From: Macrostomum lignano | Lineage: Eukaryota | Direction: 5' to 3' | Assembly: GCA_002269645.1 (NCBI GenBank) | Contig: NIVC01000978.1 | Span: 186,001 to 250,000 of the forward strand | Length of the DNA stretch: 64,000 bases | Part shown: positions 1 to 62,989 of the stretch, piece after piece | How the letters are laid out: each line of letters starts with the position of its first letter | Position numbering within the stretch: the stretch's first letter is position 1 | Translations under genes and position numbers: made by a program | Notes under the pieces: model-generated | What the model saw: the letters and a program-made list of their open reading frames with translations, nothing else | What the model was told of the DNA's origin: nothing | The model's database searches: none

Positions 1-2747
1 CTCGTCGACTGGTGGCGATGACCTCGGCGACAGTCGGGAAAGCCGGCAGGCCCGGCAAGCGGGCGCGCTGGTGGCAGCACAGCGAGTGCCCGCGGCGCAG
101 CAGCTCGGAGGCCAGCTCGCCGGACACCCAGTCGCCGTCTGTCGGGTGGAACAGCAGGCAGGCATCGCAGCGCTTGCCCTCGCCCGGACAGTCGTCCCTG
201 TCCAGCGGGTGGAAGCCCCAGCGGGCGTAGAGGCGCACCCGGACGGAGGCGGCCAGCAGCAGCAGGAGGCCGGCCGCGGCCGCCGCGGCTGCCACCAACA
301 GGAGCGACGCCCCGACGCCGCAGGCCAGCAGGCGGGCGATGAACAGGCGACGCCGCGAGGCCTCCGAGGCGGACGACATTGACGACGAAGTCGAAGAAGA
401 AGCGGACTTCGGCGGAGTGTCCGGACAGAGGTCCCGTGGCGACAGGCGCCGCAGCTGCCGGCCAGTCAGGCGACGTGGCGAAGCGCAGCGAGCGTCGGCA
501 TCGGAGCCGCGGCTGGCGAGCCAGTCCGGCAGCCAGGCCGTGCCGGCGCAGTCACAACGCCACGGGTTGCCATGGAGACGGATGTCGCGAAGCCGCCAGA
601 GGTGCGTCAGGCTGGCGACCCGGGGATCGAGCCGGGCAAGGCGGTTGTTCTGAAAGCAGACGGGGTTGCTTGCTTTCGATTCAGTGAGGTTCTGATTGCG
701 ATTGTGTCCGGGTGAAAGTACGAGGGGCATCCCAGAAGTCCGTTCAGTATGTGCCTTTTTTACCATAAACGACGAGTGAAGAGCTCAACCGCTCACGGTT
801 AAGTTTTTAAACTTTCCTGTTGCACTGTTGCGTTTTTTCGGTGACTGGACGGACTTTTGGGGTGCCCCTCGTATGTGTGCCATGGCCGGGAGACTCTCGT
901 TCCATGCGGGCTCAAATTTCGGCCATTGTTTAACTTAGCAACATGCTAAACAATATGGCTACACTCTAAGGCTACGAACCCCAGGAGTGACATTGCATAT
1001 GGCTACAAATCCAGGAGTGACATTGCATATGGCTACAAATCCAGGAGTGACATTGCATATGGCTACAAACCCGGGAGTGACATTGCATATGGCTACAAAC
1101 CCGGGAGTGACATTGCATATGGCTACAAACCCGGGAGTGACATTGCATATGGCTACAAACCCGGGAGTGACATTGCATATGGCTACAAACCCGGGAGTGA
1201 CATTGCATATGGCTACAAACCCAGGAGTGACATTGCATATGGCTACAAACCCAGGAGTGACATTGCATATGGCTACAAAGCTCATTTGCTGAAAATGATG
1301 AGCAAATAAAGAAGCTGATTTGGTATTTAAAATCCTTGGACTTTGTCAGCGGGTACGTGGATTTCGGGCCAAAGATCTCAGCCACTCGCCTGCAAGTCCA
1401 GCAGTTCCAGACGCTCCAGGCGGCTCAAAAATTTCACCGGCAGCTCCTCGAGTCCGGTGTCACTCAAGACGAGCGACTCAGCGTTGCGAAACACGTCGGG
1501 CATGCCCGGCAGGCTGGCGGGCAGCTGGCCACCGCTGAAGTTGAACCGGTAGGCGAAGCCATCGCCGAGGCGCGGCAGCTCACGCCGGTGCGGCAGCCGG
1601 TCCAGCCGAGCCCCGAGCAGTCAACGCTCACCGCGCGTCGCCAGGGCTCAACCGAGCAGGCGCACCTGTTGCCGACGCACCGGTCGGTGCAGACCAGATC
1701 CGAGCGCGGGTCCAGCTCGAGCCGGTAGCCGGCCGAGTAGATTATACGTCCAAGTAGATTCGGGGGGCTGTGACACGGTGGCAGCACCGTGTACTTCAAC
1801 AGCAAGCTGCTGATATTGCCCGCTGACGAGTTGTACAGTCGGTAGTCTCTGCAGTCGCAGCTGAGCGGGTTGCCAGCCAGATTTGAGAACACCAGAGCAC
1901 TCCGCTCGCCCAGCTGTCTGATCACCTCGCCATCGATTTCCCAACCGTCCAGGAGGTCCGTCAGGCTGACGATTCGGTTCTGCGACAAGCTGATCTCCAG
2001 TTTGATCTCCGACAGGTGGCAGTGCGACCACCAGGCTCGAGGTGACACCCGCTGTAGCCTCGAGCCGCAGCCGTCAGTGAAGAAGTCGAACTCGCCGCCT
2101 TCCAAGCTGAAATTGGCGATGCGGTTGTTGTCCAGCACCAGCACGAGTCGCTTGTCGAAATTCTGTCGCCGAATCAGCAGCGGCCAGGCGGTCAGCGAGT
2201 CCAAGGAGTTGTTGGTCAAGTTGATCTTGTTGAGCCTGACGCCGTGGAAGGCGGCTGAGGAGATCCGCGTGATGCGGTTTCTCGCCAGGCTGAGCAGCTC
2301 GAGTCCCTGCAATGCGAGGCTGCCCGGTCCCAAAGATTCGAGCCTGTTCGAATCGAGCACCAGGTGTTTGAGCTGGGGGAAGCCATGTGAGGAAAACGCA
2401 CCGACTGGCAGGCTGGAGATCCGATTGTCGCTGAGATCCAGGTACTTCAGCCGGGGAATCCTGCGCAGCTGATCAACCAGGTGCAGCACCTGCGGTCCGA
2501 TCCGAGTCAGCGAGATCACCAGGTTTTCGGCCACGCCGCCTGCGCAGCCAAGCAGCGGGCGCAGGCTCTCGGCAGCTCCGGGCGCGAAGCCGCAGTCGGC
2601 AGCCAGATGGCCCTGACCAAATTCGTACTTCCAGCTGCACTGGCACTGGCTACTAGGGAAGAACCGCTGGCAGTCTTCCAGCTGCCCGATGGCGAGCGAC
2701 CCAGCCCCTAGAAGCAGCAACACAAGCAACAGACCAGAAGCTAGCAT
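1..2747 (-). CDS. Toll-like receptor (signal peptide - LRRs - LRRCT - LRRNT - LRRs - LRRCT - TM - TIR), 3' end beyond window. Exons 2747-1390 and 649-<1; 1-nt frameshift near 1604-1605
   Basis: ATG 2747 gives MLASGLLLVLLLLGAG (signal peptide), LRRs (LKYLDLSDNRISSL, LKHLVLDSNRLESL), LRRCT GNPLSCDC and LRRNT-like CVGNRCAC...VDCSGLG. After a frameshift the frame continues LDRLPHRRELP...LERLELLDLQ. Splicing CAG|GCGAGT (1389) to tttcag| (650) yields LDLQ-NNRLARL, then LHGNPWRCDC, a hydrophobic TM (LLACGVGASLLLVAAAAAAAGLLLLLAASV) and a TIR start (CDACLLFHPTDGDWVSGELASELLRRGHSLCCHQRARLPG...VIATSRR). Family assigned from motif recall. Confidence 0.88.
978..1279. repeat. 30-bp minisatellite (ccgggagtgacattgcatatggctacaaac), ~10 copies, inside TLR intron
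   Basis: Direct tandem copies; explains ORFs 959-1285, 972-1385 and 987-1292. Confidence 0.97.
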
Positions 2748-3796: not shown

Positions 3797-6179
3797 TTAA
3801 CCCAGGAGTGACATTGCATATGGTACAAACCCGGGAGTGACATTGCATATGGTACAAACCCAAGAGTGACATTGCGTATGGCTACGAACGCAGGAGTGAC
3901 ATTGCATATGGCTACAAACCCGGGAGTGACATTGCATATGGCTACAAACCCGGGAGTGACATTGCATATGGTACAAACCCGGGAGTGACATTGCATATGG
4001 CTACAAACCCGGGAGTGACATTGCATATGGCTACAAACCCGGGAGTGACATTGCATATGGCTACAAACCCGGGAGTGACACTGCATATGGCTACAAACGC
4101 GGGAGTGACATTGCATATGGCTACAAACCCGGGAGTGACATTGCATATGGCTACAAACCCGGGAGTGACATTGCATATGGCTACAAACCCGGGAGTGACA
4201 TTGCATATGGCTACAAACCCAGGAGTGACATTGCATATGGCTACAAACCCGGGAGTGACATTGCATATGGCTACAAACCCAGGAGTGACATTGCATATGG
4301 CTACAAACCCAAGAGTGACATTGCATATGGCTACAAACCCAGGAGTGACATTGCATATGGCTACAAACCCGGGAGTGACATTGCATATGGCTACAAACCC
4401 GGGAGTGACACTGCATATGGCTACAAACCCAGGAGTGACATTGCATATGGCTACAAACCCGGGAGTGACATTGCATATGGCTACAAACCCAGGAGTGACA
4501 TTGCATATGGCTACAAACCCGGGAGTGACATTGCATATGGCTACAAACCCGGGAATGACATTGCATATGGCTACAAACCCGGGAGTAACATTGCATATGG
4601 CTACAAACCCGGGAGTGACATTGCATATGGCTACAAACCCGGGAGTGACATTGCATATGGCTACGATCCCCGGAGTGACATTGCATATGGCTACAAACCC
4701 GGGAGTGACATTGCATATGGCTACAAACCCGGGAGTGACATTGCATATGGCTACAAACCCGGGAGTGACATTGCATATGGCTACAAACCCGGGAGTGACA
4801 TTGCATATGGCTACAAACCCGGGAGTGACATTGCATATGGCTACAAACCCGGGAGTGACATTGCATATGGCTACAAACCCGGGAGTGACATTGCATATGG
4901 CTACAAACCCAGGAGTGACATTGCATATGGCTACAAACCCGGGAGTGACATTGCATATGGCTACAAACCCAGGAGTGACATTGCATATGGCTACAAACCC
5001 AGGAGTGACATTGCATATGGTACAAACCCGGGAGTGACATTGCATATGGCTACAAACCCGGGAGTGACATTGCATATGGCTACAAACCCAGGAGTGACAT
5101 TGCATATGGCTACAAACCCAGGAGTGACATTGCATATGGCTACAAACCCGGGAGTGACATTGCATATGGCTACAAATCTAGGAGTGACATTGCATATGGC
5201 TACAAACCCGGGAGTGACATTGCATATGGCTACAAACCCAGGAGTGACATTGCATATGGCTACAAACCCGGGAGTGACATTGCATATGGCTACAAACCCA
5301 GGAGTGACATTGCATATGGCTACAAACCCAAGAGTGACATTGCATATGGCTACAAACCCAGGAGTGACATTGCATATGGCTACAAACCCGGGAGTGACAT
5401 TGCATATGGCTACAAACCCGGGAGTGACACTGCATATGGCTACAAACGCGGGAGTGACATTGCATATGGCTACAAACCCAGGAGTGACATTGCATATGGC
5501 TACAAACCCGGGAGTGACATTGCATATGGCTACAAACCCGGGAATGACATTGCATATGGCTACAAACCCGGGAGTGACATTGCATATGGCTACGATCCCG
5601 GGAGTGACATTGCATATGGCTACAAACCCGGGAGTGACATTGCATATGGCTACAAACCCGGGAGTGACATTGCATATGGCTACAAACCCAGGAGTGACAT
5701 TGCATATGGCTACAAACCCGGGAGTGACATTGCATATGGCTACAAACCCGGGAGTGACACTGCATATGGCTACAAACGCGGGAGTGACATTGCATATGGC
5801 TACAAACCCAGGAGTGACATTGCATATGGCTACAAACCCGGGAGTGACATTGCATATGGCTACAAACCCAGGAGTGACATTGCATATGGCTACAAACCCG
5901 GGAGTGACATTGCATATGGCTACAAACCCAGGAGTGACATTGCATATGGCTACAAACCCGGGAGTGACATTGCATATGGCTACAAACCCGGGAGTGACAC
6001 TGCATATGGCTACAAACGCGGGAGTGACATTGCATATGGCTACAAACCCAGGAGTGACATTGCATATGGCTACAAACCCGGGAGTGACATTGCATATGGC
6101 TACGATCCCGGGAGTGACATTGCATATGGCTACAAACCCGGGAGTGACATTGCATATGGCTACGATCCTGGGAGTGACA
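3797..6179. repeat. 30-bp satellite, same unit as 978-1279, ~80 copies
   Basis: Direct tandem copies; the long ORFs here (MTLHMATNPGV.. etc.) are repeat artefacts. Confidence 0.97.
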
Positions 6180-6850
6180 CAATTGAAATAACCAAGTGGT
6201 TATGCCAGTAATAGGATTTCTCCATAAAACACACCAGCATCTGAGAAGTCGCACTAAAAAGTCACGAGAGCTCATTAGCCAAAAGCAAAGTGCAATTCGC
6301 GCAACTTTAAAGTGCAAAAAAGATTGCAGAAATTTCAAGTAAAACCGGTTGGCTAAATAAATTTTCACTGATCGATTTCGCCGGAACACGCGCAAACGTT
6401 TCACACATTGACAGCCCGAAGCAGAATTTCCTTTTGGCATTTAATTTGCTTTTTCGTCGGCTAATCCGGAGGCCAAGTGACTAAGAAATGAAGCAGAATT
6501 GTCTTGAGCTTCCCAGCAAAGAGGCGGTCAATTTTTAAGAACAAACTGCGTGAATTTTCCAACCAATTTTTGTACGGTCTTTTACTTCTTATCGATTGTC
6601 AACTTTTTTGCTGAATTGCAAAGTGTCAATTCTTAGCGGCCATTGCAACTCTCTTTAGTGCCTCCTCTTTCTCCTATGAGTTGCTCAAAAAATGGCAGAT
6701 CTTGTTGATTCCATTCTCTGTTCATTTCTGACTCGGCAAGCTGCGACAGACACGGCTGGGGTTGACTGTGCAGACAGTGAGTCTTTAAACTGTAAAAATT
6801 CAACTATAGCTAAACATATTTTTAGAACCTATCTCACTTTTAGAAAGAGG

Positions 6851-7615
6851 CAGTTTTACAGTTGGAGTTGCATTACCAACTGGCAGTTTTACAGTTGGAG
6901 TTGCATTACCAACAGGCAGTTTTACACAGTTGGAGTTGCATTACCAACAGGCAGTTTACAGTTGGAGTTGCATTACCAACTGGCAGTTTTACACAGTTGG
7001 AGTTGCATTACCAACTGGCAGTTTTACACAGCTGGAGTTGCATTACCAACTGGCAGTTTTACACAGTTGGAGTTGCATTACCAACAGGCAGTTTTACACA
7101 GCTGGAGTTGCATTACCAACAGGCAGTTTTACACAGCTGGAGTTGCATTACCAACAGGCAGTTTTACACAGTTGGAGTTGCATTACCAACAGGCAGTTTT
7201 ACAGCTGAAGTTGCATTACCAACACACAGTTTTACACAGTTGGAGTTGCATTACCAACAGGCAGTTTTACACAGTTGGAGTTGCATTACCAACAGGCAGT
7301 TTTACACAGTTGGAGTTGCATTACCAACAGGCAGTTTTACACAGTTGGAGTTGCATTACCAACAGGCAGTTTTACACAGTTGGAGTTGCATTACCAACTG
7401 GCAGTTTTACACAGTTGGAGTTGCATTACCAACAGGCAGTTTTACACAGTTGGAGTTGCATTACCAACAGGCAGTTTTACACAGCTGGAGTTGCATTACC
7501 AACTGGCAGTTTTACACAGTTGGAGTTGCATTACCAACAGGCAGTTTTACACAGCTGGAGTTGCATTACCAACTGGCAGTTTTACACAGCTGGAGTTGCA
7601 TTACCAACAGGCAGA
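6851..7615. repeat. 35-bp minisatellite (cagttttacacagttggagttgcattaccaacagg), ~22 copies
   Basis: Direct tandem copies with 33-bp variants. Confidence 0.95.
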
Positions 7616-8038
7616 TACGAAAACAGGATTAAAAAATTCATTACCAGATTAATTTCGAGGTTGCTAGAGACTTTTGCTCCAAATCACAAAATTTAATAAA
7701 CACTCCTGAAATTTTAAAATTTTCATGACATTGAATTCGATCTGAAACTCGCAGAAATCATGCATAAGACAGCAGTTTCTTTTAGATTCCATGAAGTCTT
7801 GCCCGCAGCATGAGGAATTCTTGAGCATTGCATTATTTAACAAAGGCTTGCACAATGATGCTGAAAACTCAATTTTCTTATTTTTGAATTCAATTTTATT
7901 CCCTATTCATTTTTCACGCTGGGTGCATGCGGGCGCTTCTGAAACTCCATAGAGTATTCACTGGATCGAATGTAACGAGTGAGGTAATTAACTAATGTAT
8001 CGATCTGTCTATCTGTCTATCTGTCTATCTATCTATCT

Positions 8039-9592
8039 CCAGGCCGACCCATTGTCTCTGACTGCAACTCCGAAAGTTACATGAGTGCCAGGTTCATCGA
8101 TCTCTATCTGCAGCCTATTGCCAAGGAACAGAACTCCTTCATTAGAGACACTGATCACTTTCAAGCAGCTATTCATGACTTGACGTACGACAAAGAAGAG
8201 AGCGTCTTCCTGGTCACAATGGATGTCGAATCCTTGTACACGAACATACCTACGGATAAGGGGATTAAAGCTGTTAGGGACGCTTTTCAAAACTTTCCTC
8301 AACCATCAAGACCTGACGAGAAACTACTCGAGCTCCTTGACATCAATCTGACTAAGAATGACATGGTGTTCAACGAAAAACGCTATCTGCAGGTTAAGGG
8401 CACAAGCATGGGAAAATCTTTTGCTCCATCCTATGCCAATATTTTCATGTCCGATTGGGAGTCCAAAGCTTTGAACACAGCTCCTTTTGCCCCTCATTTT
8501 TACAAGCGCTACATTGATGATATTTTCATGACTTTCATCGGGACGGAGGCACAACTGGAGCAGCTACACAGACATCTGAACAGCTGCGACAATAACATAC
8601 GCCTCACAATGCAATACAGTAGAGATAAAATCAACTTTTTGGACTGCTGTGTCTCTTTGACTAACGAAGACAACAGGAAGAGATTAACCTGCTCGATCTA
8701 CTTCAAACCCACGGATTCCCGCCAATTATTGAACCCGAATTCTTTTCACCCAAAGCACACATTCAAAGGCATCATGAAATCTTAGTTTCTCCGCTACGCT
8801 CGCCGCTGCACCTTCAAAGAGGACTTCAAAGAGGCTAGCAGCAGCCTGATGAGCATCCTTAAAAAGCAGGGACACTCGGTCCGCTTGATCCGAGACGCTA
8901 AAAAGTCAGCTCTCATACAACTTGGACTTTACATAGATTTTCAGTGGGCTTTCGGCTTTCAAGACTGCAGAAACCGAGACTGTGCTGTATGCCGACGACA
9001 CGGCTGCTTTGGCCAAGTTTGTCCCGGTTCCACAGCAACTAAAATGGCCTACAGAATTTGCCAGAAGGTCCGCTGTGACTCCAGGTGCGCGGTCTACGCA
9101 ATTCTTTGCAACACCTGCAATGGCCGTTGCATTTATGTCGGCGAAACAGGTGGAGCTATCAAGGTCAGACTCCAGGCCCACCTAAGTGACATTAGGCTCG
9201 CTAAGGACACCCCTGTTAGCAGACATTTTTGCTCTCCGAATCACTGCCTCGACGATCTTCGCTTCATGGGGCTCTGGTATCTCAGCACCGAGAGCGAGAC
9301 CAGCAAAGAAGGAGCGCTACGCAGACGCAGGGTCATGGAACAGAAACTCATCTCCCTGCTGAGCACGCAGTCACCTGCAGGCCTCAATACAATTAACAGC
9401 AACACAAGCGCTTGTATCCCAATAGTTATTCCTTTTACGGATAGATCGACTAATATTGTACACGAAATTCGCACTGTTCTCTCAAACCATGCACATGGGT
9501 TGGACACTGTTGCTGCGTACACTCGAGCACCCTCTCTAAAGGACATTCTTTGCCCCTCAAAACTGCCTGCCCTCACTGATGGTATTGATTAA
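8039..9592 (+). pseudogene. PLE RT-endonuclease ORF, N-terminally truncated, one premature stop
   Basis: ORFs 8081-8785 and 8849-9592 are in the same frame, joined through KS*FLRYARRC (likely CAG>TAG). Confidence 0.88.
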
Positions 9593-9770: not shown

Positions 9771-9865
9771 CATAATTCTTATATTTTTTGACCTTTGTGA
9801 CTATCTTATTTATTTCTCAGTTACCTTGGTTAGAGCTGCCACTGCGTGAGAGGTTTTTTCAAACG

Positions 9866-10238
<373 letters not shown>

Positions 10239-10269
10239 AGATAGATACCCTGACGAAAAGTGACGAATA

Positions 10270-19223: not shown

Positions 19224-26727
<7,504 letters not shown>

Positions 26728-29241: not shown

Positions 29242-30920
29242 ATGGCATCAGAAAGAATAGAGAAAAATTTTGATCCAAACACAATTGAGGTAAGTGAGGA
29301 CTTGGTGTCTATAGCTAGATATCAGCTAGACTTTCTGGAAGCAGTTGACCACAAGCCCATATTGAACAGTGATGCAGTGCTAGACAGGGCGCTACACCGC
29401 TATGAAACCATGTGGCTTCCACTGTTGTGGAGTAATAAGGACAGCTGCGATTGATGAAGCCGCCATTTGATATGGCCTGGATTGCCCACTGCCACCAGCT
29501 GGCTCCCAGGTGCTACAGGAGTGACGTCATCAACCTGATTGGTTAGTCGTGGGTGACAATTTAAGAATCCAACCTGACTAAATCCCTACATTATTTTGAA
29601 AATCGGTGCTGTTAACACATTTTGGTGCCGCAGACAGTCAACTTAGCACCGCAGACACTCATTTTAGCGCCGCAGACTCATTTTAGCGCCGCAGACACTC
29701 ATTTTAGCGCAGCAGACACTCATTTTGGCGCCGCAGACACTCAATTTAGCGCCGCAGACACTCATTTTGGCACCGCAGACACTCATTTTGGCGCCGCAGA
29801 CACTCATTTTGGCGCCGCAGACACTCATTTTGGTACCACAGACACTCATTTTGGCACCGCAGACACTCATTTTGGCGCCGCAGACTCATTTTGGCGTCCT
29901 CAAGCAAATGACTGATTTCGATAACGGGTCACAAGAAGGGGCGGGGGGACAAAGCATTGGCATGCCCCGCCCCAGCATAACTTTTACTGCTTTTACTGGG
30001 GGACATGTTCCCCCCCCCCAGGGTGGCGGCGCCCCTGTTTGCTACTATCGAGGGGATAATAGATAGTTACCAAAGTGGCGAATGCACAAACACTGCAGGT
30101 GTAGGGATGAGAGCTGGGTAAGAAAGAAATTCAGGTTAAGTAGCAGCCAATCGAAAGGAAGCTAGAGGTGAGGACAGACTCAAAAAGTAAATTGACAGAT
30201 ATCGGAGCACTGATAAAACCAATTCCTGCCACTGCATGCAAACTTCAGGCTTCGTCCCGGACACGCAGTCGCCCACTCCGGACACCGTTTCCGACGAGCT
30301 GAGCCGCAAGCTCTGGTCCAGCGCTCATCCCAGCGAGCCCTTTGACCTGGACTTGACTGCCGTGGCTGCCGCAGCTCCTGTGGATGGCGCTGGCAGCGGC
30401 TTCGCCAAGTCGCGGCTGACCTACGACATCCGCGGCGCAGCGCAGCGACAGCGGGGCTTCTTCTACAATGTGTCCCTGCCGCACTACAGGGACAGCCAGT
30501 TTCTTCAAGCCAGTCTCAGACGGTACAAACAGTTCCTCAGGCTGCAGCAGCTCTGCCCGCAGGTGAGCCGAGTTGGTACAATTCATTAATCCTTGATTAG
30601 TTGATTACCATTAATATTAATACCATGTCCTCTCCCATCTGGCCTCTCCCATCTGGCCTCTCCCCCCTGGCCTCTCCCCTCTGGCCTCTCCCCACTGGCC
30701 TCTCCTTTCTGGCCTCTCCCCTCTGGCCTCTCCCCTCTGGCCTCTGGCCTCTCCCCTCTGGCCTCTCCCCTCTGGCCTCTCCCCTCTGGCCTCTCCCCTC
30801 TGGCCTCTCCCCTCTGGCCTCTCCCCTCTGGCCTCTCCCCTCTGGCCTCTCCCTCTGGCCTCTCCCCTCTGGCCTCTCCCACTGACCTCTCCTTTCTGGC
30901 CTCTCCCCTCTGGCCTCTCC

Positions 30921-30995
<75 letters not shown>

Positions 30996-33900
30996 CCCAT
31001 CCGCCTACGCCACTGGGCAGAGTATTCAATGTAGTAAAAATACCAAGCCAGGATATACTTCAGTATCAAAACGCTGCCCAGGAGTTCCTGGTGCCCTGCT
31101 ACGACATTGACCTGATGTGGCACTCGCACCAGCTCACTCCCCTGGCGTACGAGCGAGACTGTCTGCGTCTACTCAACCGGGTGCTCAGCCACGATGACAA
31201 TGTTGGCGACCGAAGCGACGGCAGCAGACTGTCCAAGGCGTACGCCAGGACTGCTGAGCTGTGGCTGCAGCACTTTGGCCAGAGCTACGCCAGGAGCGGG
31301 TATTCAAGAAAATTCATTTTTTCTACTCAGTATTTCTTTTTATGTCAATGAGTAGAATCTTTTTGAAAACTCAAAAGTCCCATAATAGTACTTTAAGGTT
31401 TTACGTCTCCTTACACGGAGCACTTCTAAGAGTCGTAGTAACCAGCACTTATTAGCCAACACTTTTTGTCAGCAGCCTATAAGGCTTATTCACACCCACC
31501 CCATTTCTCTGTCCCCGTTCGTCACCCACCCCATTTCTCTGTCCCCGTTAATCTCCCACCCCATTTCTCTGCCCCGTTCGTCACCCACCCCATTTCTCTG
31601 CCCCGTTCGTCACCCACCCCATTTCTCTGCCTCGTTCGTCACCCACCCCATTTCTCTGCCCCTGTTATCGACCACCCACTTTGCCGCCAAATGAGGCATC
31701 AAATCACCCGACCGATATAAAAATGAATGAAATCTGATGATCACGAATTTTGGCCCTAGTTAATGTTGATATGAAGTAGTAACCTTTAGTAGTATTGTTC
31801 CAAAGTCAGTACCAACTAGTTTTTTATATATTCTAAAGAGTTACGTTTTCTTAATCCAAATCTCTAATTACCTCCAAAGCTATCGGCAAATCTTCAGTTA
31901 CGAGTAGATTTCTGACGATGAAACCCCATAACAATCCGTGACGCCCTGCAGCTGCATGTACCGCGGCGAGTCCCCAGCTGGCAGGCTGTCCAAGTTCAAC
32001 CTCAGCTGCCTCCATTCGGGCTGCCAGCGACGCTACCAACTCAGCCTGACCCGCATGGAGCTGACTGCGCCTCCAACTATCGACCGTTACAAAGTGGTCC
32101 TGCTGGCGCCCAAACTGCCGCCTTGCAAGCCTGGTAAGAGGAGACGTCTGGTCGCCATGACGCAGGCTCAGGGAACTGTCGTTGAGTCTCCCGTAACCGT
32201 CTTTGATTACCTTGTTAACGGCGATGGCGACCAGCCTCTGCTGCTAGAGCTGATTGACAAGCGAAAGAGCTCGACTGGATTGTGCGGCTGCGGCGGTACT
32301 ATGCTTGGCAATTGCAAGGTGAATGCATTGGTTGCAATTTTGTATACAGCTTGAATAAGATGCGAATGTCTAATTCTAGCATTGCACTGATAGTTCCGTA
32401 GAACTCTGAAGTTGTGTTAAGGCTAGCTGGAAAATAGTATCGGTCTTGGTCTATGTCAAGTTTGATCATACTCGTACTTTTGGACACTCACAGCAGGTGT
32501 TGAAACTCAAACAGTAAACCAATTCCTCACCGCAGGTCGCTGTATCGGACAGCATAAAGCAGTTGCCTCCCACCGAGCCAGTTTATAAGCTGGTCTGCGA
32601 CGCTTCGTTTTCTTACGAAGCTCCAAACTACGGTATCAGCAACTTTGCGGCTGAGCTGACCTTCTCGTCAAATGTGCCTTGTATTTTCGATTGTAATTTG
32701 CGTCTTGTTCCGGGCGACTGGGTTGTTGCGATTATGCCGACGGATGTGCCCAGCCTTTGGGGGCCTGTGCCGCTGGGTCAAGTGCCCCAAGGTCAGGAGC
32801 ATCGTTGCATTGTGGCGTCGCACAGGTAATAATAGATCTGTAGTTTTAGCATATGTCCAATCGAAGAAGTCATTGGTATGTGCTGTAACAATCTACTCAT
32901 TCTCTTCCAGCCTAGTCACGGAGAGCTCGCAGTTGGTTTTCACAGTTCGAGTGATTCATTCGCAACAACTGGGCCAGTCGGTAGTGCAAGTGTTCAACGG
33001 TGACAGCATGGTAACCGTAGCTTACATGATTGGCGTTGACCAGTTGCCCACGCCGTCTCAGGTGAGTCTTCAACAAACTATTATTTCTCTTGTTTAGTCG
33101 ATGCAGATTCTTAGTAGGCTACGCAAAAATTCCAGGTTTCCATTAAAACCACGCTCGAATTTTAGTGTACTTGACTAGCGTTCGCCCCCTCCAGGGGTGC
33201 TGCTTTGAAAAGGATCAATGATCACTTTATTGATTTGCCATCTGAATTTTTCTAGTGCACAAATGTAATAGTGTCCTAGCTTTGATTTTTGGCATCCTTA
33301 CTATGGACCTGCGTTGCCAAATGTCATCAACGTTCTCCAGACGAATGTTACTTACGATAAACTTGAAACGAAAACACTGGTCAGGATTTACGAGGGGATT
33401 GCTGAGATGTCAATATTCTTGACGGGGAGGAATGGCCGAGACGTCAAGGTTGATATGTCAGACGCTACACATGTATAGTTTATTCAAAAAAATTCATTAA
33501 ATTCTTCGCTGGCTCTCTAACGGGGGGGGCGCTGATTGCTATTGTGTTTCTAGAAGTAGTGTGGAGTTCCTAAAATCGTTCGCGCTGATAATTTGCATCT
33601 TGAATTTTATTTTGGCATCAAGTATTTAGGCCCACTACGCGAACACAACACAGTGTCAATGTCAACCAAATTTGAAGTTGAGAAACGTCTCTTCTGGTGA
33701 AATTGCATATATGGCCTTTTTCATTTTGTTTAAACTCTTTTCAGATCACTACAGCTAAGCGCGGCCCGCCCAGCCTCAATCCGGGCGTCAGGCAGCGCGC
33801 CTTCATCATCAAAGATGCCGCCGGAGACTGGGGTCTGTTGCTAGGCAACTGGACTGGCCGACGTCGCGGTGTTCCGGCGACGCCCATGACGCCACCCATT

Positions 33901-42151: not shown

Positions 42152-43421
42152 TATTCAGTTGTTAAGAAAGTTCTCACAGTTTCTAGAACCTTCCTCCAAA
42201 CTGAGTTTTTTAAATTATAGTAAGGACTTTAAGAAACGAAGTAATTGCCATCTGAATCAATCACATTCTGCCATTTTTCAGGTAGAGACAATGCTATCAG
42301 CGTAGAATTTCTCAGGTTTTGAGGCAAAAAACTCGTTGAGCCAGTTATCCAGGGCTTCCTCATCAGCAAAAGTTTTGCTCATCAAGGCATTTGTCAGGGC
42401 CGAGAAAAGATAGTAATTGCTAGGTGCCAGGTTGGGAGAATACGGAGTATGAAGCACCAGTTCCCAGCCAAGGTCCAATAACTTTTGGCAAGTCATCTTG
42501 GTAGTGTGGGGACGGCTGTTATTATATAGTCCTGAATCAGACCAGGCCATGATTTGGTTGCTTCTGTGTGATTGCGGTGGCCAATCTGTCCAGCTGTTGG
42601 CAATACAGGTTGGCTATAATCCATGTGTTGGGTGGCAGCAGCTCATAGAGGATCACACCTTTATAGTCCCACCAAACATATAGCATGACCTTGCGGGGGT
42701 AGAGTCCAGCTTTAGGCTGTGGCTCAGGGGTTGCATCAGTATTCACCCACAACTGTCAATGCTTGATGTTCACATATAAACACCATTTTTCATTGCCAGT
42801 AACAATTGACTTCAGCCAATTGTGAATGCGCCAAAAGGAGAGAAGAGTAGTGGCCATCTCTGCCCTACGTTTGCAGTCCCAGTTGGACAATTCATGGGGT
42901 ACCCATTGAATCAACTTGTGCACTTTGCCCAGTTGATACAAGTAAATGGCAATTGTTTGATTGTTTACCCCAAGGACTTGCGCCAAGTCATGTGCAGTTT
43001 GTCGGGGGTCAGCCTTAATGAGTGTGCACAGGTAGTCATCATCCACCTCAGAAGGATGCCCTAACTGGAGCAAATCTTTGAGGCTGAAATCTCCCTGGCA
43101 AAACCAAGCAAACCAATCTTGCACAGTGCATTCAGACACAATACTAGCACCAAATGCACTGTTAATGTGGCAGCTCAATTTGGCTACTTACCTGCTTTGA
43201 TGCCAAATTTGAAGTCATAGAGTAACAGACCACAAATATAGGGTCAAGAGAGATCCATGTAGTTGATCTGGCTTTAATAGCAACAATCATAAAAAGTAGT
43301 CTATCAAGATTGCACACACCCACCCTCAATATATACCCGCACAGTAAGCTTCTAGAATGTTCCATAAAGTTCTGGTATCAAATTTTCTAGAAACTGCAAG
43401 AATTTTCTCAACAACCAAATA
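42152..43421 (-). mobile_element. Full-length degenerate mariner (DD34D type) transposon, ~1.27 kb
   Basis: TIRs tattcagttgttaagaaagttctcacagtttctagaa / ttctagaaactgcaagaattttctcaacaaccaaata with TA ends. Transposase remnant 43258-42229 has WVPHEL, TGNEKW, RKVMLYVWWDYKGV and YSPNLAPSNYYLF. Confidence 0.93.
42229..43258 (-). pseudogene. Mariner transposase pseudogene
   Basis: Multiple stops (TGA probably from CGA) and frameshifts; ORF fragments 42756-43178, 42537-42752 and 42278-42550. Confidence 0.9.
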
Positions 43422-46538: not shown

Positions 46539-48183
46539 ATGGGTAAACCGGCAATTGCTGGCTGCTACTGCTGACTCCGGGATTCCAGCGGCCGGCGCTG
46601 AGGTTGCGTTTCAATTTTTGCACTCGGAGCTGGTCAGCTTCTTGCTGCGCGAACAGCTGCAGGGTGGCGGAGGAGGTCCCGCCACTGTTCAACAGTGCAG
46701 AGCCCAGCTATCCAAGCTGGAAACCATGGGCTTTCGAGTTGGCCAAGCCTACGTTGAAAAGATGACTAAAGATTTGCCGAGATTTCGAGACGATTTGGAG
46801 ATTGTGAAATTCCTCTGCAAAGATTTCTGGGCCAGTCTGTTTAAAAAGCAGGTGGACAACCTCAAGACTAATCACCAAGGTGTCTATGTGGTTATTGACG
46901 AGAAATTTTCCCTTCTAGTGCCCATGGCCAGAGGTAAGCTGCTAAAAGTGCTATCAATTTAAATTTTGCTTTGGATGTGATCTAGCATTTCCAATCTAAC
47001 ATTGTTTTACCTCATGAAGGTTCTCTACGAGCTAACTGAACTGTTTCACTTCGTCCTCATGAAGGTTCTCTACGAGCTAACTGAACTGTTTCACTTCGTC
47101 CTCATGAAGGTTCTCTACGAGCTAACTGAACTGTTTCACTTCGTCCTCATGAAGGTTCTCTACGAGCTAACTGAACTGTTTCACTTCGTCCTCATGAAGG
47201 TTCTCTACGAGCTAACTGAACTGTTTCACTTCTTCCTCATGAAGGTTCTCTACAAGTTACCAAAACAGAGCCCTATCCCAGATTTTTTAACCCGAAGGTT
47301 CGCCACCTGAATTTTTCACCTTCCCATGAAGGCTCTACCTGAACTGTTTCAGTCTCACGATGACTCACCTCATAAAGGCTCCCTATTTGGACTGTATCAC
47401 TTCATAAGGCTCTCTACCTGGGCTGTTCCACTTCATAAAGGCTCCCTACCTGGACTGTGCCACTTCATAAAGGCTCCCTACCTGGACTGTGCCACTTCAT
47501 AAAGGCTCCCTACCTGGACTGTGCCATTTCATAAAGGCTCCCTACATGGACTGTGCCATTTCATAAAGGCTCCCTACCTGGACTGTGCCACTTCATAAAG
47601 GCTCCCTACCTGGGCTGTGTCACTTCATAAGGCTCCCTACCTGGACTGTGCCACTTCATAAGGCTCCCTACCTGGACTGTGTCACTTCATAAGGCTCCCT
47701 ACCTGGACTGTGCCACTTCATAAGGCTCCCTACCTGGGCTGTGCCACTTCATAAAGGCTCCCTACCTGGACTGTGTCACCTCCTAAAGGCTCCCTACCTG
47801 GACTGTGTCACCTCCTAAAGGCTCCCTACCTGGGCTGTGCCACCTCCTAAAGGCTCCCTACCTGGACTGTGCCACTTCATAAAGGCTCTCTAACTGAAGT
47901 GTTTCACTAAAAGAATTTTTTCACTGAAACTGTACTTAAATATGTCTTAACATTTTGCAATATTTCAGTTTATCTTACCATGTTTAATTAACAATAGCAT
48001 ACAAAAATGCATTCTGAAACAGGTAAACAATACCTGGACCGGTGCCACCTGTACACAGCATTTCCCTGCGGTCTGATTCGCGGTGCCCTCACCAACCTGG
48101 GCCTCAGGGCCATTGTCACCGCCGAAGTTGAAGAATTGCCTCGAGTGAAATTTCAAATTCAGCTTGTTCAGCACTCGGCCTGA
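46539..48183 (+). CDS. TRAPPC6: TRAPP complex subunit 6 (Trs33/TRAPPC6). Exons ~46539-46933 and 48023-48183; start uncertain
   Basis: FQFLHSELV..KLETMGFRVGQ..RFRDDLEIVKFLCKDFW..FKKQVDNLKTNHQGVYV, G|GKQYL..AFPCGLIRGALTNLG..VTAEV. Phase-1 GT-AG intron. ATG 46539 is one base out of frame (possible extra G at 46560-46561). Confidence 0.92.
47010..47890. repeat. 45-bp (47010-47255) and 31-32-bp (47370-47890) minisatellites in TRAPPC6 intron
   Basis: Units cctcatgaaggttctctacgagctaactgaactgtttcacttcgt and cataaaggctccctacctggactgtgccactt. Confidence 0.92.
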
Positions 48184-49284: not shown

Positions 49285-52200
49285 ATGCGATTCCTGCCAG
49301 CCAGCCAGCTCTATCGCAAGCTAAACGGCGTCCTCTGCATTTACAAGCCGCCTCACGTGTCGCCTCGTCAGTGCGTGAACGGCATTGTGCAGCAACTGTG
49401 CGACTCGCTTAACGACGGCCCGTTTGAACCGACTCGGCCATTCACTGAGGTGCGCCTCTAATACCTTTTAAATATTTCAGTGCCTTTACTAGGGTATATC
49501 CCTTGTTTCTCTTCCCTCCCCTCCCCTCTCTCCCCTCTCTTCCCTCTTCCTTCCCCTTTCTTCCCTCCCCTCTCTTCCCTCCCCTCTCTTCCCTCCCCTC
49601 TCTTCCCTCCCCTTTATTGCCTTCCCTCTCTTCCCTTCCCTCTCTTCCCTCCCCTCTCTTCCCTCCCTCTCTTCCCTCCCCTCTCTTCCCTCCCCTCTCT
49701 TCCCTCCCCTCTCTTCCCTCCCCTCTCTTCCCTCCCCTCTCTTCCCTCCCCTCTCTTCCCTCCCCTCTCTTCCCTCCCCTTTATTGCCTTCCCTCTCTTC
49801 CCTTCCCTCTCTTCCCTCCCCTCTCTTCCCTCCCCTCTCTTCCTCCCCTCTCTTCCTCCCCTCTCTTCCCTCCCCTCTCTTCCTCCCCTCTCTTCCCTCC
49901 CCTCTCTTCCCTCCCCTCTCTTCCCTCCCCTCTCTTACCTCCCTTTATTGCCTTCCCTCTCTTCCCTTCCCTCTCCTCCTCTTTCTTCTCTCCCTCTCTT
50001 CCCTCCCCTCTCTTCCCTCCCCTCTCTTCCCTCCCCTCTCTTCCCTCCCCTCTCTTCCCTCCCCTTTATTGCCTTCCCTCTCTTCCCTTCCCTCTCTTCC
50101 CTCCCCTCTCTTCCCTCCCCTCTCTTCCCTCCCCTCTCTTCCCTCCCCTTTATTGCCTTCCCTCTCTTCCCTTCCCTCTCCTCCTCTTTCTTCTCTCCCC
50201 TCTCTTCCCTCCCCTCTCTTCCCTCCCCTCTCTTCCTCCCCTCTCTTCCTCCCCTCTCTCCCCCTCTCTTCCCTCCCCTCTCTTCCCTCCCCTTTCTTGC
50301 CTTCCCTCTCTTCCCTCCCTCTCTTCCCTCCCCTCTCTTCCCTCCCCTCTCTTCCCTCCCCTTTATTGCCTTCCCTCTCTTCCCTTCCCTCTCTTCCCTC
50401 CCCTCTCTTCCCTCCCCTCTCTTCCCTCCCCTCTCTTCCCTCCCCTCTCTTCCCTCCCCTCTCTTCCCTCCCCTCTCTTCCTCCCCTCTCTTCCCTCCCC
50501 TCTCTTCCCTCCCCTCTCTTCCCTCCCCTCTCTTCCCTCCCTTTATTGCCTTCCCTCTCTTCCCTTCCCTCTCCTCCTCTTTCTTCTCTCCCCTCTCTTC
50601 CCTCCCCTCTCTTCCCTCCCTCTCTTCCCTCCCTCTCTTCCCTCCCCTCTCTTCCCTCCCTCTCTTCCCTCCCCTTTATTGCCTTCCCTCTCTTCCCTTC
50701 CCTCTCCTCCTCTTTCTTCTCTCCCCTCTCTTCCCTCCCCTCTCTTCCCTCCCCTCTCTTCCCTCCCCTCTCTTCCCTCCCCTCTCTTCCCTCCCTCTCT
50801 CCCCTCTCTTCCCTCCCTCTCTTCCCTCCCCTTTCTTGCCTTCCCTCTCTTCCCTTCCCTCTCCTCCTCTTTCTTCTCTCCCTCTCTTCCCTCCCCTCTT
50901 CGCCCCTCTCTTCCTCCCCTTTCTTGCCTCCCCTCTCTTCCCTCCCCTCTCTTCCCTCCCCTCTCTTCCCTCCCCTCTCTTCCCTCCCCTCTATTCCCTC
51001 CCCTCTCTTCCCTCCCCTCTCTTCCCTCCCCTCTCTTCCCTCCCTCTCTTCCCTCCCCTCTCTTCCCTTCCCTTTCTTGCCTTCCCTCTCTTCCCTCCCC
51101 TCTCTTCCCTCCCCTCTCTTCCCTCCCCTCTCTTCCCTCCCTCTCTTCCCTCCCCTCTCTTCCCTCCCCTCTCTTCCCTCCCCTCTCTCCCCCTCTCTTC
51201 CCTCCCCTCTCTTCCCTCCCCTTTCTTGCCTTCCCTCTCTTCCCTTCCCTCTCCTCCTCTTTCTTCTCTCCCCTCTCTTCCCTCCCCTCTCTTCCCTCCC
51301 CTCTCTTCCCTCCCCTCTCTTCCCTCCCCTCTCTTCCCTCCCTCTCTTCCCTCCCCTCTCTCCCCCTCTCTTCCCTCCCTCTCTTCCCTCCCCTTTCTTG
51401 CCTTCCCTCTCTTCCCTTCCCTCTCCTCCTCTTTCTTCTCTCCCCTCTCTTCCCTCCCCTCTTCGCCCCTCTCTTCCCTCCCCTCTCTTCCCTCCCTCTC
51501 TTCCCTCCCCTCTCTTCCCTCCCCTCTCTTCCCTCCCTCTCTTCCCTCCCCTCTCTTCCCTCCCCTCTCTTCCCTCCCCTCTCTTCCCTCCCCTCTCTTC
51601 CCTCCCCTCTCTTCCCTCCCCTCTCTTCCCTCCCCTCTCTTCCCTCCCCTTTCTTGCCTTCCCTCTCTTCCCTCCCCTCTCTTCCCTCCCCTCTCTTCCC
51701 TTCCCTCTCTTCCCTCCCCTTTCTTGCCTTCCCTCTCTTCCCTTCCCTCTCCTCCTCTTTATTCTCTCCCCTCTCTTCCCTCCCCTCTCTCCCAGGCCCC
51801 AAGGCACGGTGTTTATGTTTACATCCTGCCTGGCGATCAGACAGTCAGGGCCGCTGTTCGCCCTGGCTGCGTACGCATAAGTGTGCTTGCGCAGGGGTTA
51901 TCAGGAGGCATAACAGCTTTGCCTTGATCCTCACAACTACTTGATCCTCACAAGGAATTTACAGAGCTTATTTTCTAATTCAAACTCACATTCGTCTCAC
52001 CAGGTGATACGTCAACCAGCAGCTATTGAGCAGCCGTCGCATGGGCAAACTCAAATTGGCTCCCCAGCTTCCCCAGCAGCATCAGTTGAGTCCATCAGCC
52101 ATCGCCTAGTTGCCAGGCCGGATCTACGCAGTCTCAGCCAAGTGGCCGGCCCAGCCTTTGTCCCCGGCTCGAGTTTCCCCTTCACAGTGGCTGACCCGCT

Positions 52201-62578: not shown

Positions 62579-62989
62579 CTGGAAATACAAAGGAATCAGA
62601 ATCGAAGCTTGAAGTGTCATTTGCAATTAATTTCGAAAATGAAGTTTAGAAGTGATAATAATATTAATAGAAGTAATAAAAGACAGTAAAAATATCGGTA
62701 CCGAAAGTTAAATGGAGGCCATCCACGAAAATGGGACAGAAGCTGAAAACAACATTCTCTGAAATAAGGCTGTAAGGGAAAAAATCGTCAGAAAAAAGAC
62801 TGGAACTGAAATCGTGGTCTTGGAACAGAAAGAATCGTCGGAAGATATTTAAAAATGATATTTAAAAAATCAGACTGCAAATAGACAAGTTTAAAGAATC
62901 CTTATTAATGAAACAGAAACTGATGACTTCCTTGCAAATGAGACATAAGCCGAAGGAATATTTGTACTTGAAGTAAATGAGCCAAACTA

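What the first reader, a model, noticed from the sequence alone, without database searches (positions are those of the whole stretch)
1..2747. Complete multi-cysteine-cluster Toll-like receptor missed by the ORF track
Seen: joining two exons and one frameshift gives SP-LRR-LRRCT-LRRNT-LRR-LRRCT-TM-TIR. The TM/TIR exon (649-1) is absent from the ORF list. Known: this architecture is the protostome/mcc TLR type. From memory, comparative surveys reported true TLRs as absent from Platyhelminthes. Inference: if this genome is a flatworm, as the repeat landscape suggests, this would be a retained bona fide TLR with a divergent TIR box 1 (CDACLLF).
Basis: partly seen in the sequence, partly recalled or inferred. 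Interest (0 to 1): 0.72.

Follow-up and report, generated by a model that had tools for sequence, protein, structure and literature searches.

The report
Overlooked Toll-like receptor gene in Macrostomum
The first 2.7 kb of this window, from the free-living flatworm Macrostomum lignano, encode most of a Toll-like receptor, a gene family that published surveys score as absent from this species and from flatworms in general; however, the gene has a one-base frame break and its signalling domain is cut off by the window edge.

Summary
On the minus strand, 2747..1 encodes a signal peptide, an LRR block, LRRCT, LRRNT, a second LRR block, LRRCT, a membrane helix and the start of a TIR domain.

Reading it requires:
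- one 1-nt frame correction, located between 1616 and 1606;
- removal of one 740-nt intron (1389..650), which has a GC-AG boundary.

The joined model aligns collinearly over about 670 residues with bona fide Toll/TLR proteins (E down to 2e-46). It keeps every cysteine of both cysteine clusters.

The organism is Macrostomum lignano: a TRAPPC6B gene in the same window is 99-100% identical to the UniRef entry for that species. Two surveys (Orús-Alcalde 2021, Saco 2023) report no TLRs in flatworms, and the first scores M. lignano itself as 0. No matching protein exists in a collection of 5.8 billion clusters.

"Complete" is wrong. The window ends after about 59 of about 140 TIR residues, Pfam's TIR model does not fire, and close relatives have an intron about 12 codons further on. 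The TIR start is real: a custom HMM gives 32 bits against at most 4.7 for shuffles, and solved TLR TIR domains are the best matches. It has lost conserved box 1 and box 2 residues.

I could not decide whether the frameshift is an assembly error or a recent inactivation. Verdict: a new member of a known family in an unexpected lineage. Interest is moderate.

The parts
2685..2747 (-). Start codon and signal peptide (MLASGLLLVLLLLGAGSLAIG, residues 1-21)
   Evidence: Translation. One of only two hydrophobic segments in the hydropathy scan. Aligns with the N-terminal leaders of relatives.
2592..2672 (-). N-terminal cysteine cap (LRRNT-like, C26..C52)
   Evidence: C-x8-C-x-C...DC pattern aligned with the CPxxCxC...DC of relatives. 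Pfam LRRNT does not call it.
1872..2591 (-). First LRR block (about 8 repeats, with one lineage-specific insertion at about residues 216-245)
   Evidence: Pfam LRR_8 1.2e-21, LRR_4 4.4e-17. LxxLxLxxNxL motifs at residues 100, 126, 149 and 172. Collinear blastp with TLRs.
1689..1871 (-). Internal LRRCT (NPLSCDC ... LVC, residues 293-353)
   Evidence: C297, D298, C299, C325 and C353 are invariant across all 9 aligned sequences. The relative P0143 has a Pfam LRRCT hit (residues 324-347), which the collinear alignments place in the internal-LRRCT region.
1617..1691 (-). Internal LRRNT (CTDRCVGNRCAC...VDC, residues 353-377)
   Evidence: C357, C362, C364 and C377 invariant. Relatives have Pfam LRRNT hits in this region (P0145 340-372, P0151 367-400).
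1606..1616 (-). Frameshift zone (tcggggctcgg): one base missing relative to an intact reading frame
   Evidence: Frame analysis. Relatives show C-S-x-x-x-L-x-x-L-P with no gap. The zone includes a run of four G.
1390..1605 (-). Second LRR block, first part (second reading frame), ending ...LELLDLQ
   Evidence: Translation. P386, P392, L452 and N455 invariant. tblastn and blastp collinearity.
650..1389 (-). Intron, 740 nt, GC-AG (CAG|GCGAGT ... TTTCAG|AAC), 47.6% GC against 66-73% in the flanking exons
   Evidence: Sequence. Composition. The junction restores an exact LRR with no gap against relatives. No transcript evidence was available.
970..1279 (.). 30-nt minisatellite (10.3 copies) inside the intron, the same family as the 79.5-copy array at 3799-6179
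   Evidence: Tandem Repeats Finder, the repeat finder. The intron flanks are unique within the window.
425..649 (-). Exon 2 start: last LRR plus membrane-proximal LRRCT (NPWRCDC...C528)
   Evidence: C485, C487, W496, C508 and C528 invariant. Pfam LRRCT is weak, 14.8 bits. The AlphaFold2 model of this part matches the LRRCT caps of Nogo receptor, Slit and GPIb.
242..346 (-). Transmembrane segment (LFIARLL...LLAASV, residues 555-589), preceded by a Ser-rich linker (356-415)
   Evidence: Hydropathy peak of 2.65. AlphaFold2 helix at residues 92-144 of exon 2, pLDDT 93-97.
179..241 (-). Juxtamembrane motif RVRLYARWGFHPLDRDDCPGE
   Evidence: Matches the family consensus RVxLYxRWKFHPFDRDECxGE. R590, H600, P601 and R604 invariant. 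This is the best-conserved stretch in the phmmer hits.
2..178 (-). First ~59 residues of the TIR domain (box 1 CDACLLF at 169-149, box 2 LCCHQRARLPG at 82-50); the frame runs off the window
   Evidence: Custom TIR HMM: 32.4 bits at positions 1-60 of 142, against a maximum of 4.7 bits in 5000 shuffles. PDB phmmer: the top four hits are TLR TIR domains (TLR15/TLR2 entry and TLR1), E 0.002-0.03, with TLR6 further down at 0.48. AlphaFold2 gives betaA-alphaA-betaB-alphaB, and Foldseek hits TLR1 and TLR15 TIR. Pfam TIR gives no hit.

Best explanation
The locus is a Toll/TLR-family gene of Macrostomum lignano, of the multiple-cysteine-cluster (P-type) kind. Its parts, in order, are a signal peptide, an N-terminal cysteine cap, an LRR block, an LRRCT-LRRNT pair, a short LRR block, a membrane-proximal LRRCT, a Ser-rich stalk, one transmembrane helix, a conserved juxtamembrane motif, and a TIR domain of which only the first third lies inside the window.

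Inferred mechanism, by homology only:
- It is a type I surface receptor. The LRR solenoid binds a ligand, either a Spaetzle-like cystine-knot protein as for Drosophila Toll, or a microbial pattern directly.
- Ligand binding dimerises the receptor and brings the cytoplasmic TIR domains together to recruit a TIR adaptor such as MyD88.

Shown here: the domain order, the collinearity with TLRs, the host species, and the absence of any matching annotated protein.

Not shown: that the gene is transcribed, that the rest of the TIR exists, or that the frame break is absent in the animal.

I consider an intact, expressed gene (frameshift being an assembly indel in a G run) and a very recently disabled copy about equally likely. 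In either case the TIR has drifted at conserved box 1 and box 2 positions, so signalling may be non-canonical.
For: - Species. TRAPPC6B exons at 46555-46938 and 48022-48180 are 99-100% identical to the UniRef M. lignano protein. The TLR intron carries the same 30-nt minisatellite as the neighbouring intergenic DNA.
- Family. phmmer of exon 2 against 1.84 billion representatives gave 329 hits. The ten best I scanned with Pfam all carry a TIR domain, six of them together with LRR_8, and several also LRRNT or LRRCT. Named hits are Arenicola TLR13, amphioxus TLR1, octocoral toll-like and tick Toll.
- Collinearity. The joined model aligns over residues ~1-669 at 25-28% identity, with E down to 2e-46.
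- Conservation. 43 of 47 columns invariant in 8 relatives are kept, including all cysteine-cluster cysteines.
- TIR start. Custom HMM 32.4 bits against at most 4.7 for 5000 shuffles. The top four PDB sequence hits are TLR TIR domains, in register. The AlphaFold2 model (pLDDT 82) has an LRRCT cap, a TM helix and betaA-alphaA-betaB-alphaB, and Foldseek hits LRRCT caps and TLR1/TLR15 TIR.
- Coding signal. Exon GC3 is 0.79-0.86 against intron GC 0.48. There are no in-frame stops in the roughly 2 kb of coding sequence.
- Why it was missed. No identical or near-identical protein is present in the collection. The published survey was based on predicted proteins and required TIR, TM and LRR in one sequence.
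Against: - One frame break lies inside a conserved motif.
- The splice donor is GC rather than GT, and I had no transcript data.
- Pfam's TIR model does not detect the fragment.
- Three of nine invariant TIR positions are lost (F617C in box 1, F650R in box 2, I656A), against 0 of 37 elsewhere.
- The remaining ~80 TIR residues, including box 3, are outside the window, so a truncated or absent TIR cannot be excluded.
- The custom HMM was built from proteins retrieved with this exon, so it is not fully independent. The PDB and Foldseek results are independent but weak (E 0.002-0.04).
Confidence: 0.8

Rival explanations
1. Recently inactivated TLR pseudogene. The one-base deletion at 1616-1606 is real, the protein terminates after 427 residues (stop at 1466-1464), and the locus is a decaying relic of the ancestral spiralian TLR. 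This would agree with the reported absence of functional TLRs in flatworms.
For: A frame break lies within a conserved LRRNT-to-LRR transition. The splice donor is non-canonical, GC. TIR box 1 and box 2 residues are lost. The gene is absent from every protein set searched.
Against: There is only one lesion in about 2 kb and no in-frame stops. All 37 invariant non-TIR columns are retained, so the substitutions are not spread as neutral decay predicts: all three lost positions fall among the 9 TIR columns, hypergeometric p = 84/15180, about 0.006, computed by hand from the counts. The exon/intron GC3 contrast is intact. The break sits in or next to a G4 run, a typical long-read indel-error site. 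GC-AG donors with the rest of the consensus intact (AG|GCGAGT) are functional in animals (established knowledge).
Confidence: 0.4
2. A 'TLR-like' LRR-TM protein that is not a true TLR. The cytoplasmic tail keeps only a vestigial TIR beginning and ends shortly beyond the window. The protein would then act as an adhesion or co-receptor LRR molecule, comparable to the LRR-only proteins described for Hydra and planarians.
For: Only 59 TIR residues can be seen. Pfam TIR is silent. Conserved box 1 and box 2 residues are changed. Surveys report TLR-like but no TLR proteins in flatworms.
Against: The visible part aligns without gaps to TIR positions 1-60 at 32 bits. It folds as betaA-alphaA-betaB-alphaB with pLDDT around 88-91. 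The BB-loop P-G and the S-R-R (SKR) motif are kept. The reading frame is still open at the window edge. Relatives continue the TIR after an intron at that point.
Confidence: 0.12
3. The frame change is removed by splicing of a 53-nt GT..AG mini-intron (1631..1579), so no frameshift is needed.
For: GTGAGC...GTGAG|CTG has GT-AG ends, sits in phase 0, and its length of 3k+2 moves the first frame into the second (worked out by hand).
Against: It would delete VSVDCSG..LDRLPHRRE, including invariant Cys377 and P386. The 'intron' itself encodes the conserved motif in two frames, which would be an unlikely coincidence.
Confidence: 0.03
4. Contamination, chimeric assembly, or a chance run of open frames in GC-rich DNA.
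For: The TLR exons are much more GC-rich (GC3 0.79-0.86) than TRAPPC6B (0.57). GC-rich DNA gives long spurious ORFs on both strands.
Against: Collinear homology to TLRs at E 2e-46 across 670 residues. The intron carries the same minisatellite as the adjacent 2.4-kb array. The window is contiguous with M. lignano genes.
Confidence: 0.02

Closest known systems
Spiralian mcc/P-type TLRs, e.g. Arenicola marina 'Toll-like receptor 13' (UCK81512.1, P0246)
   Same: Same domain order from leader to TIR. Collinear alignment of model 1-669 with 8-622, E 3e-42. Same cysteine clusters and the same juxtamembrane HPF(D/N)RDEC motif.
   Different: Only about 25% identity. The M. lignano TIR has C for F in box 1 and AR for DF in box 2. 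It has an extra intron in the last LRR block, a frame break, and a TIR that cannot be followed to its end.
Unnamed metagenome family of 640-670-residue mcc TLR ORFs (P0143 cluster, P0145, P0151, P0304; JGI/ENA contigs of unknown eukaryotes)
   Same: Closest sequences over the TM-TIR stretch (35-41% identity, E about 1e-17). Same length and architecture.
   Different: The source organisms are unknown. Their ORFs are uninterrupted up to an intron inside the TIR (…SNFLxR|GT). Their boxes 1 and 2 are canonical (DVFLCC…, YHERDFLPG).
Drosophila Toll-type receptors / tick 'protein toll' (XP_037283965.2, P0215) and octocoral 'protein toll-like' (XP_028414772.1, P0248)
   Same: mcc ectodomain, TM and TIR. 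Significant full-length alignments.
   Different: Longer ectodomains and 24-25% identity. I made no phylogeny, so the clade (alpha, beta or gamma of Orús-Alcalde 2021) is unassigned.
Planarian 'TLR-like' proteins (TIR-only and LRR-only; Peiris 2014, Tsoumtsa 2018, as reviewed in PMC7958881)
   Same: Flatworm proteins with pieces of the TLR architecture.
   Different: Those have no LRR linked to a TIR. Here LRR, TM and the start of a TIR sit in one gene, and LRRCT, TM and TIR sit in a single exon.

Membership tests
Toll/TLR family (criterion used in surveys: LRR + TM + TIR in one protein) | Extracellular leucine-rich repeats behind a signal peptide | tested here: met
   Pfam LRR_8 1.2e-21, LRR_4 4.4e-17. 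Hydrophobic leader at residues 1-21.
Toll/TLR family (criterion used in surveys: LRR + TM + TIR in one protein) | Single transmembrane helix between the last LRRCT and the TIR | tested here: met
   Hydropathy segment 555-589. AlphaFold2 helix with pLDDT 93-97. No dedicated TM predictor was available.
Toll/TLR family (criterion used in surveys: LRR + TM + TIR in one protein) | Cytoplasmic TIR domain | tested here: inconclusive
   Only positions 1-60 of 142 are inside the window. Evidence for: custom HMM 32.4 bits against at most 4.7 in shuffles; TLR TIR domains are the top four PDB hits; Foldseek hits TLR1 and TLR15 TIR, probability 0.98-0.99. Evidence against: Pfam TIR (PF01582) and TIR_2 give no hit. 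The rest of the domain cannot be seen.
Toll/TLR family (criterion used in surveys: LRR + TM + TIR in one protein) | All parts in one uninterrupted coding sequence or transcript | tested here: inconclusive
   A 1-nt correction at 1616-1606 and a GC-AG splice are needed. No reads or transcripts were available to me.
mcc (P-type) TLR subclass | Two or more LRRCT modules, with an internal LRRCT-LRRNT pair | tested here: met
   C297/C299/C325/C353, C357/C362/C364/C377 and C485/C487/C508/C528 are invariant with relatives, and those relatives have Pfam LRRCT and LRRNT hits. Pfam itself finds only a weak LRRCT in the M. lignano protein (14.8 bits).
Signalling-competent TLR TIR (conserved boxes) | Box 1 (F/Y)D(A/V)F(I/V/L)S-type motif | tested here: not met
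   The sequence is CDACLLF. The Asp is kept, but the Phe invariant in all 8 relatives is Cys (F617C).
Signalling-competent TLR TIR (conserved boxes) | Box 2 / BB loop R-D-x-x-P-G | tested here: inconclusive
   The sequence is HQRARLPG. H, R, P and G are kept, while D becomes A and the invariant F becomes R. The functionally critical Pro is present.
Signalling-competent TLR TIR (conserved boxes) | Box 3 (FW motif) and the C-terminal half of the domain | not testable with these tools
   It lies beyond window position 1. No M. lignano sequence outside the window could be reached.
Pseudogene | Disabling lesions spread through the coding sequence (stops, several frameshifts, loss of conserved residues throughout) | tested here: not met
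   There is one frame break and no in-frame stop. 37 of 37 invariant non-TIR columns are kept. A single very recent lesion cannot be excluded.

The most novel reading that the evidence does not exclude
Macrostomum lignano retains an expressed, intact mcc Toll-like receptor. If so, TLRs were not lost at the base of Platyhelminthes, as currently stated, but later, after Macrostomorpha branched off. Its TIR, altered at box 1 and box 2, would signal through a modified or non-MyD88 partner.
Probability: 0.4. Interest if true: 0.7.

Novelty: new member of a known kind. Interest (0 to 1): 0.55.

Why it matters
Comparative immunology currently treats flatworms as a phylum that lost TLRs early. M. lignano, an early-branching lineage, is cited as the key evidence for that (Orús-Alcalde 2021; Saco 2023 concurs).

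A TLR-architecture gene in its genome, intact or freshly broken, moves the loss to a later node, or shows that loss is still in progress. It also illustrates how surveys based on predicted proteins miss genes that are split by introns, contain frame breaks, or carry divergent domains.

M. lignano is transgenic- and RNAi-tractable, so a flatworm TLR could be tested directly for roles in immunity, development or regeneration.

Tried and rejected
- Whole-model homology search. It was swamped by generic LRR words and returned only weak LRR and TLR hits, none from M. lignano.
- Word-indexed search with exon 2. Nothing at E <= 0.01. The index missed relatives that full HMMER then found.
- Exact look-ups of the 427-residue ORF and nine start variants. 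None is on record. The non-ATG variants were translated without an initial Met, so only the ATG variant was a fair test. One search already shows that no near-identical protein exists, so I ran no further search on 'repaired' ORFs.
- Reaching the DNA left of the window. This was not possible. M. lignano appears in the collection only as UniRef/MetaClust proteins, with no contigs.
- Pfam TIR on the fragment. No hit. I replaced it with a custom HMM, a PDB search and a fold search.
- A 53-nt mini-intron as an alternative to the frameshift. Rejected because it removes an invariant Cys and Pro.
- A GT donor at 1385. Rejected because it gives the wrong phase for exon 2.
- TE origin of the intron. 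Only the minisatellite is repeated in the window; the intron flanks are unique.
- Composition screen for M. lignano-like paralogues among the hits. The GC-rich-type proteins matched only the LRRCT part.
- Clade assignment (alpha, beta or gamma). Not attempted, because 59 TIR residues are too few for a meaningful tree.
Full report
**What is in the sequence**

On the minus strand an ATG at 2747 opens a frame that stays open past 1611. It encodes, in order:
- a hydrophobic leader;
- a cysteine cap;
- about eight LRRs;
- an LRRCT (NPLSCDC…LVC);
- an LRRNT (CTDRCVGNRCAC…VDC).

From 1605 the homologous reading continues in another frame (LDRLP…LELLDLQ) down to 1390. The switch must lie within tcggggctcgg (1616-1606). 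Conserved Cys377 (1619-1617) is read in the first frame, and the conserved L..LP that follows is read in the second. Relatives show the spacing C-S-x-x-x-L-x-x-L-P with no gap, so exactly one base is missing relative to an intact gene.

**The intron**

At 1390 the sequence reads CAG|GCGAGT, and at 649 it reads TTTCAG|AAC. Joining these two points gives LELLDLQ|NNRLARL, a perfect LxxLxLxxNxL repeat with no gap against any relative.
- The 740-nt intron is 47.6% GC, against 66-73% in the flanking exons. Exon GC3 is 0.79-0.86.
- The intron holds 10.3 copies of a 30-nt minisatellite. The same repeat occurs as 79.5 copies at 3799-6179.

**Exon 2 and the window edge**

Exon 2 (649..2) encodes the last LRR, a membrane-proximal LRRCT, a Ser-rich stalk, a 35-residue hydrophobic segment, the motif RVRLYARWGFHPLDRDDCPGE, and then 59 residues that run off the window.

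The ORF list lacks this exon only because the tool omits ORFs that run off an end.

**Is it more than chance?**

- Pfam finds LRR_8 at 1.2e-21, but only a sub-threshold LRRCT and no TIR.
- A full HMMER scan of exon 2 against 1.84 billion representative proteins gave 329 hits at E <= 1e-3. The best over the TM-TIR part reach about 1e-17 at 35-41% identity.
- All ten top hits I scanned carry a Pfam TIR domain. Six also carry LRR_8, and several also LRRNT or LRRCT.
- Named members include Arenicola marina TLR13, amphioxus TLR1, an octocoral 'protein toll-like' and tick 'protein toll'.
- The frame-joined, spliced model aligns collinearly from about residue 1 to 669 with dozens of these proteins, at 25-28% identity and E down to 2e-46. 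The alignments run straight across both the frameshift and the splice junction.
- In a nine-sequence alignment, every cysteine of the internal LRRCT-LRRNT pair and of the membrane-proximal LRRCT is invariant.
- 43 of the 47 columns invariant in the eight relatives are kept in the M. lignano protein.

**The TIR question**

Only the start of the domain is present. The evidence that it is a TIR start:
- A profile built from 130 TIR domains of the retrieved relatives (query excluded) scores the 61-residue fragment at 32.4 bits. It aligns without gaps to profile positions 1-60 of 142, against a maximum of 4.7 bits in 5000 shuffles. This profile is not fully independent of the query.
- Independent checks agree, though weakly. 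phmmer against all PDB sequences puts TLR TIR domains in the top four places (the TLR15/TLR2 entry at E 0.002, TLR1 at 0.03), with TLR6 further down at 0.48, all in register with box 1 and box 2.
- An AlphaFold2 model of exon 2 (pLDDT 82) shows an LRRCT cap, a long helix and betaA-alphaA-betaB-alphaB. Its Foldseek hits are LRRCT caps (Nogo receptor, Slit, GPIb) and the TLR1 and TLR15 TIR domains.

The three invariant columns lost within the window all lie in the TIR:
- F617C in box 1 (CDACLLF);
- F650R in box 2 (HQRARLPG, where D is also replaced by A);
- I656A.

That is 6 of 9 invariant columns kept in the TIR against 37 of 37 elsewhere. All three lost positions falling in the TIR has a hypergeometric p of about 0.006 (84/15180, computed by hand from the counts). 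The BB-loop Pro-Gly is retained.

The closest metagenome relatives all end at …SNFLxR followed by GT. In one contig the remainder of the TIR lies about 1.9 kb downstream. An intron about 12 codons beyond the window edge is therefore plausible.

**Whose genome**

The ORF at 46555-46962 is 100% identical to UniRef 'Trafficking protein particle complex subunit 6B, Macrostomum lignano'. Both exons of that gene lie in the window. The shared minisatellite ties the TLR intron to the neighbouring DNA. Contamination or chimerism is very unlikely.

**What is known**

- Orús-Alcalde et al. 2021 list M. lignano (genome) with 0 TLRs. They use it to argue that TLRs were lost early in platyhelminth evolution (PMC8609888).
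- Their method ran TIR and LRR HMMs on predicted proteins and required LRR, TM and TIR in one sequence.
- Saco et al. 2023 also found no TLRs in Platyhelminthes (PMC10279657). Reviews say the same (PMC7958881; PMC6043800).
- Full-text searches found no report of a Macrostomum TLR.
- No identical or near-identical protein exists in the 5.8-billion-cluster collection.

A gene with a frame break, an intron in the last LRR block, a probable intron in the TIR, and a TIR that Pfam does not detect is exactly what such surveys would miss or file as 'TLR-like'.

**Functional status**

For an intact gene:
- there is one lesion and no stop in about 2 kb;
- conservation is perfect outside the TIR;
- the coding composition is sharp;
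- the break sits in or next to a G4 run, a classic long-read indel site;
- the GC donor has an otherwise perfect consensus.

For a dead or dying gene:
- the frame break falls in a conserved motif;
- the donor is GC rather than GT;
- TIR positions have been lost;
- the gene is absent from all protein sets.

I cannot separate these without reads or cDNA. A 53-nt GT-AG mini-intron (1631..1579) would also restore the frame, but it would delete invariant Cys377 and Pro386, so I reject it.

**Mechanism (inferred from the family)**

The protein would be a type I receptor. Its LRR solenoid, built of two cysteine-capped blocks, binds a ligand. Dimerisation then brings the TIR domains together to recruit a TIR adaptor. 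With box 1 and box 2 altered, coupling to MyD88 may be weakened or rerouted.

**Verdict**

This is a real TLR-family locus in a flatworm said to have none. It is incomplete in this window and of uncertain integrity. It is a new member of a known kind, and of moderate interest.

Noticed in passing
window 970-1279 and 3799-6179: The same 30-nt minisatellite occurs inside the TLR intron (10.3 copies) and as a 79.5-copy, 2.4-kb array about 1 kb upstream of the gene. It gives long spurious ORFs in several frames on both strands.
   Followed up: partly
window 1388-1389 (donor) and 650-651 (acceptor): The only splice that restores the LRR uses a GC-AG intron (CAG|GCGAGT…TTTCAG|AAC). This intron position is absent from all relatives examined, so it is lineage-specific.
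   Followed up: partly
window 2-2747 versus 46555-48180: TLR exons have GC3 of 0.79-0.86, and exon 2 is 72.8% GC. The TRAPPC6B exons in the same window have GC3 of 0.57-0.59. I have no explanation for this compositional difference between neighbouring genes.
   Followed up: no
window 8081-9592: Two adjacent ORFs with a reverse transcriptase (RVT_1, 3.5e-10) and a weak GIY-YIG nuclease match. This is the domain pair of Penelope-like retroelements, and the copy is probably fragmentary.
   Followed up: partly
window 42756-43178 (minus strand): Remnant of a mariner/Tc1-type transposase N-terminus (weak HTH_48 and HTH_Tnp_Tc3_2 matches).
   Followed up: partly
window 46555-46938 and 48022-48180: Complete two-exon TRAPPC6B gene, 99-100% identical to the UniRef M. 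lignano protein. This is what identifies the species.
   Followed up: yes
whole window (e.g. 6848-7650, 9790-10240, 19550-21570, 30590-31130, 49480-51940, 54910-55770, 56650-57220, 58080-59240, 61000-61800, 62900-63975): Very high density of mini- and microsatellite arrays, each producing long repeat-encoded ORFs. Strong local GC- and AT-skew swings, e.g. GC skew -0.90 at 50001-52000.
   Followed up: no
L002 941-2950 and about 4785-5108; proteins P0143, P0145, P0151, P0304, P0288: A family of mcc TLR genes from unidentified eukaryotes in JGI/ENA metagenomes. All are called as ORFs that stop at the same intron inside the TIR (…SNFLxR|GT). They are the closest relatives of the M. lignano gene over the TM-TIR part, and their source organisms are unknown.
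   Followed up: partly
window 1579-1631: A 53-nt GT…AG segment in phase 0 whose removal would also repair the reading frame. It overlaps the conserved VDCS…LP motif, so I judged it a coincidence, but it could act as a cryptic rescue splice if the frameshift is real.
   Followed up: partly
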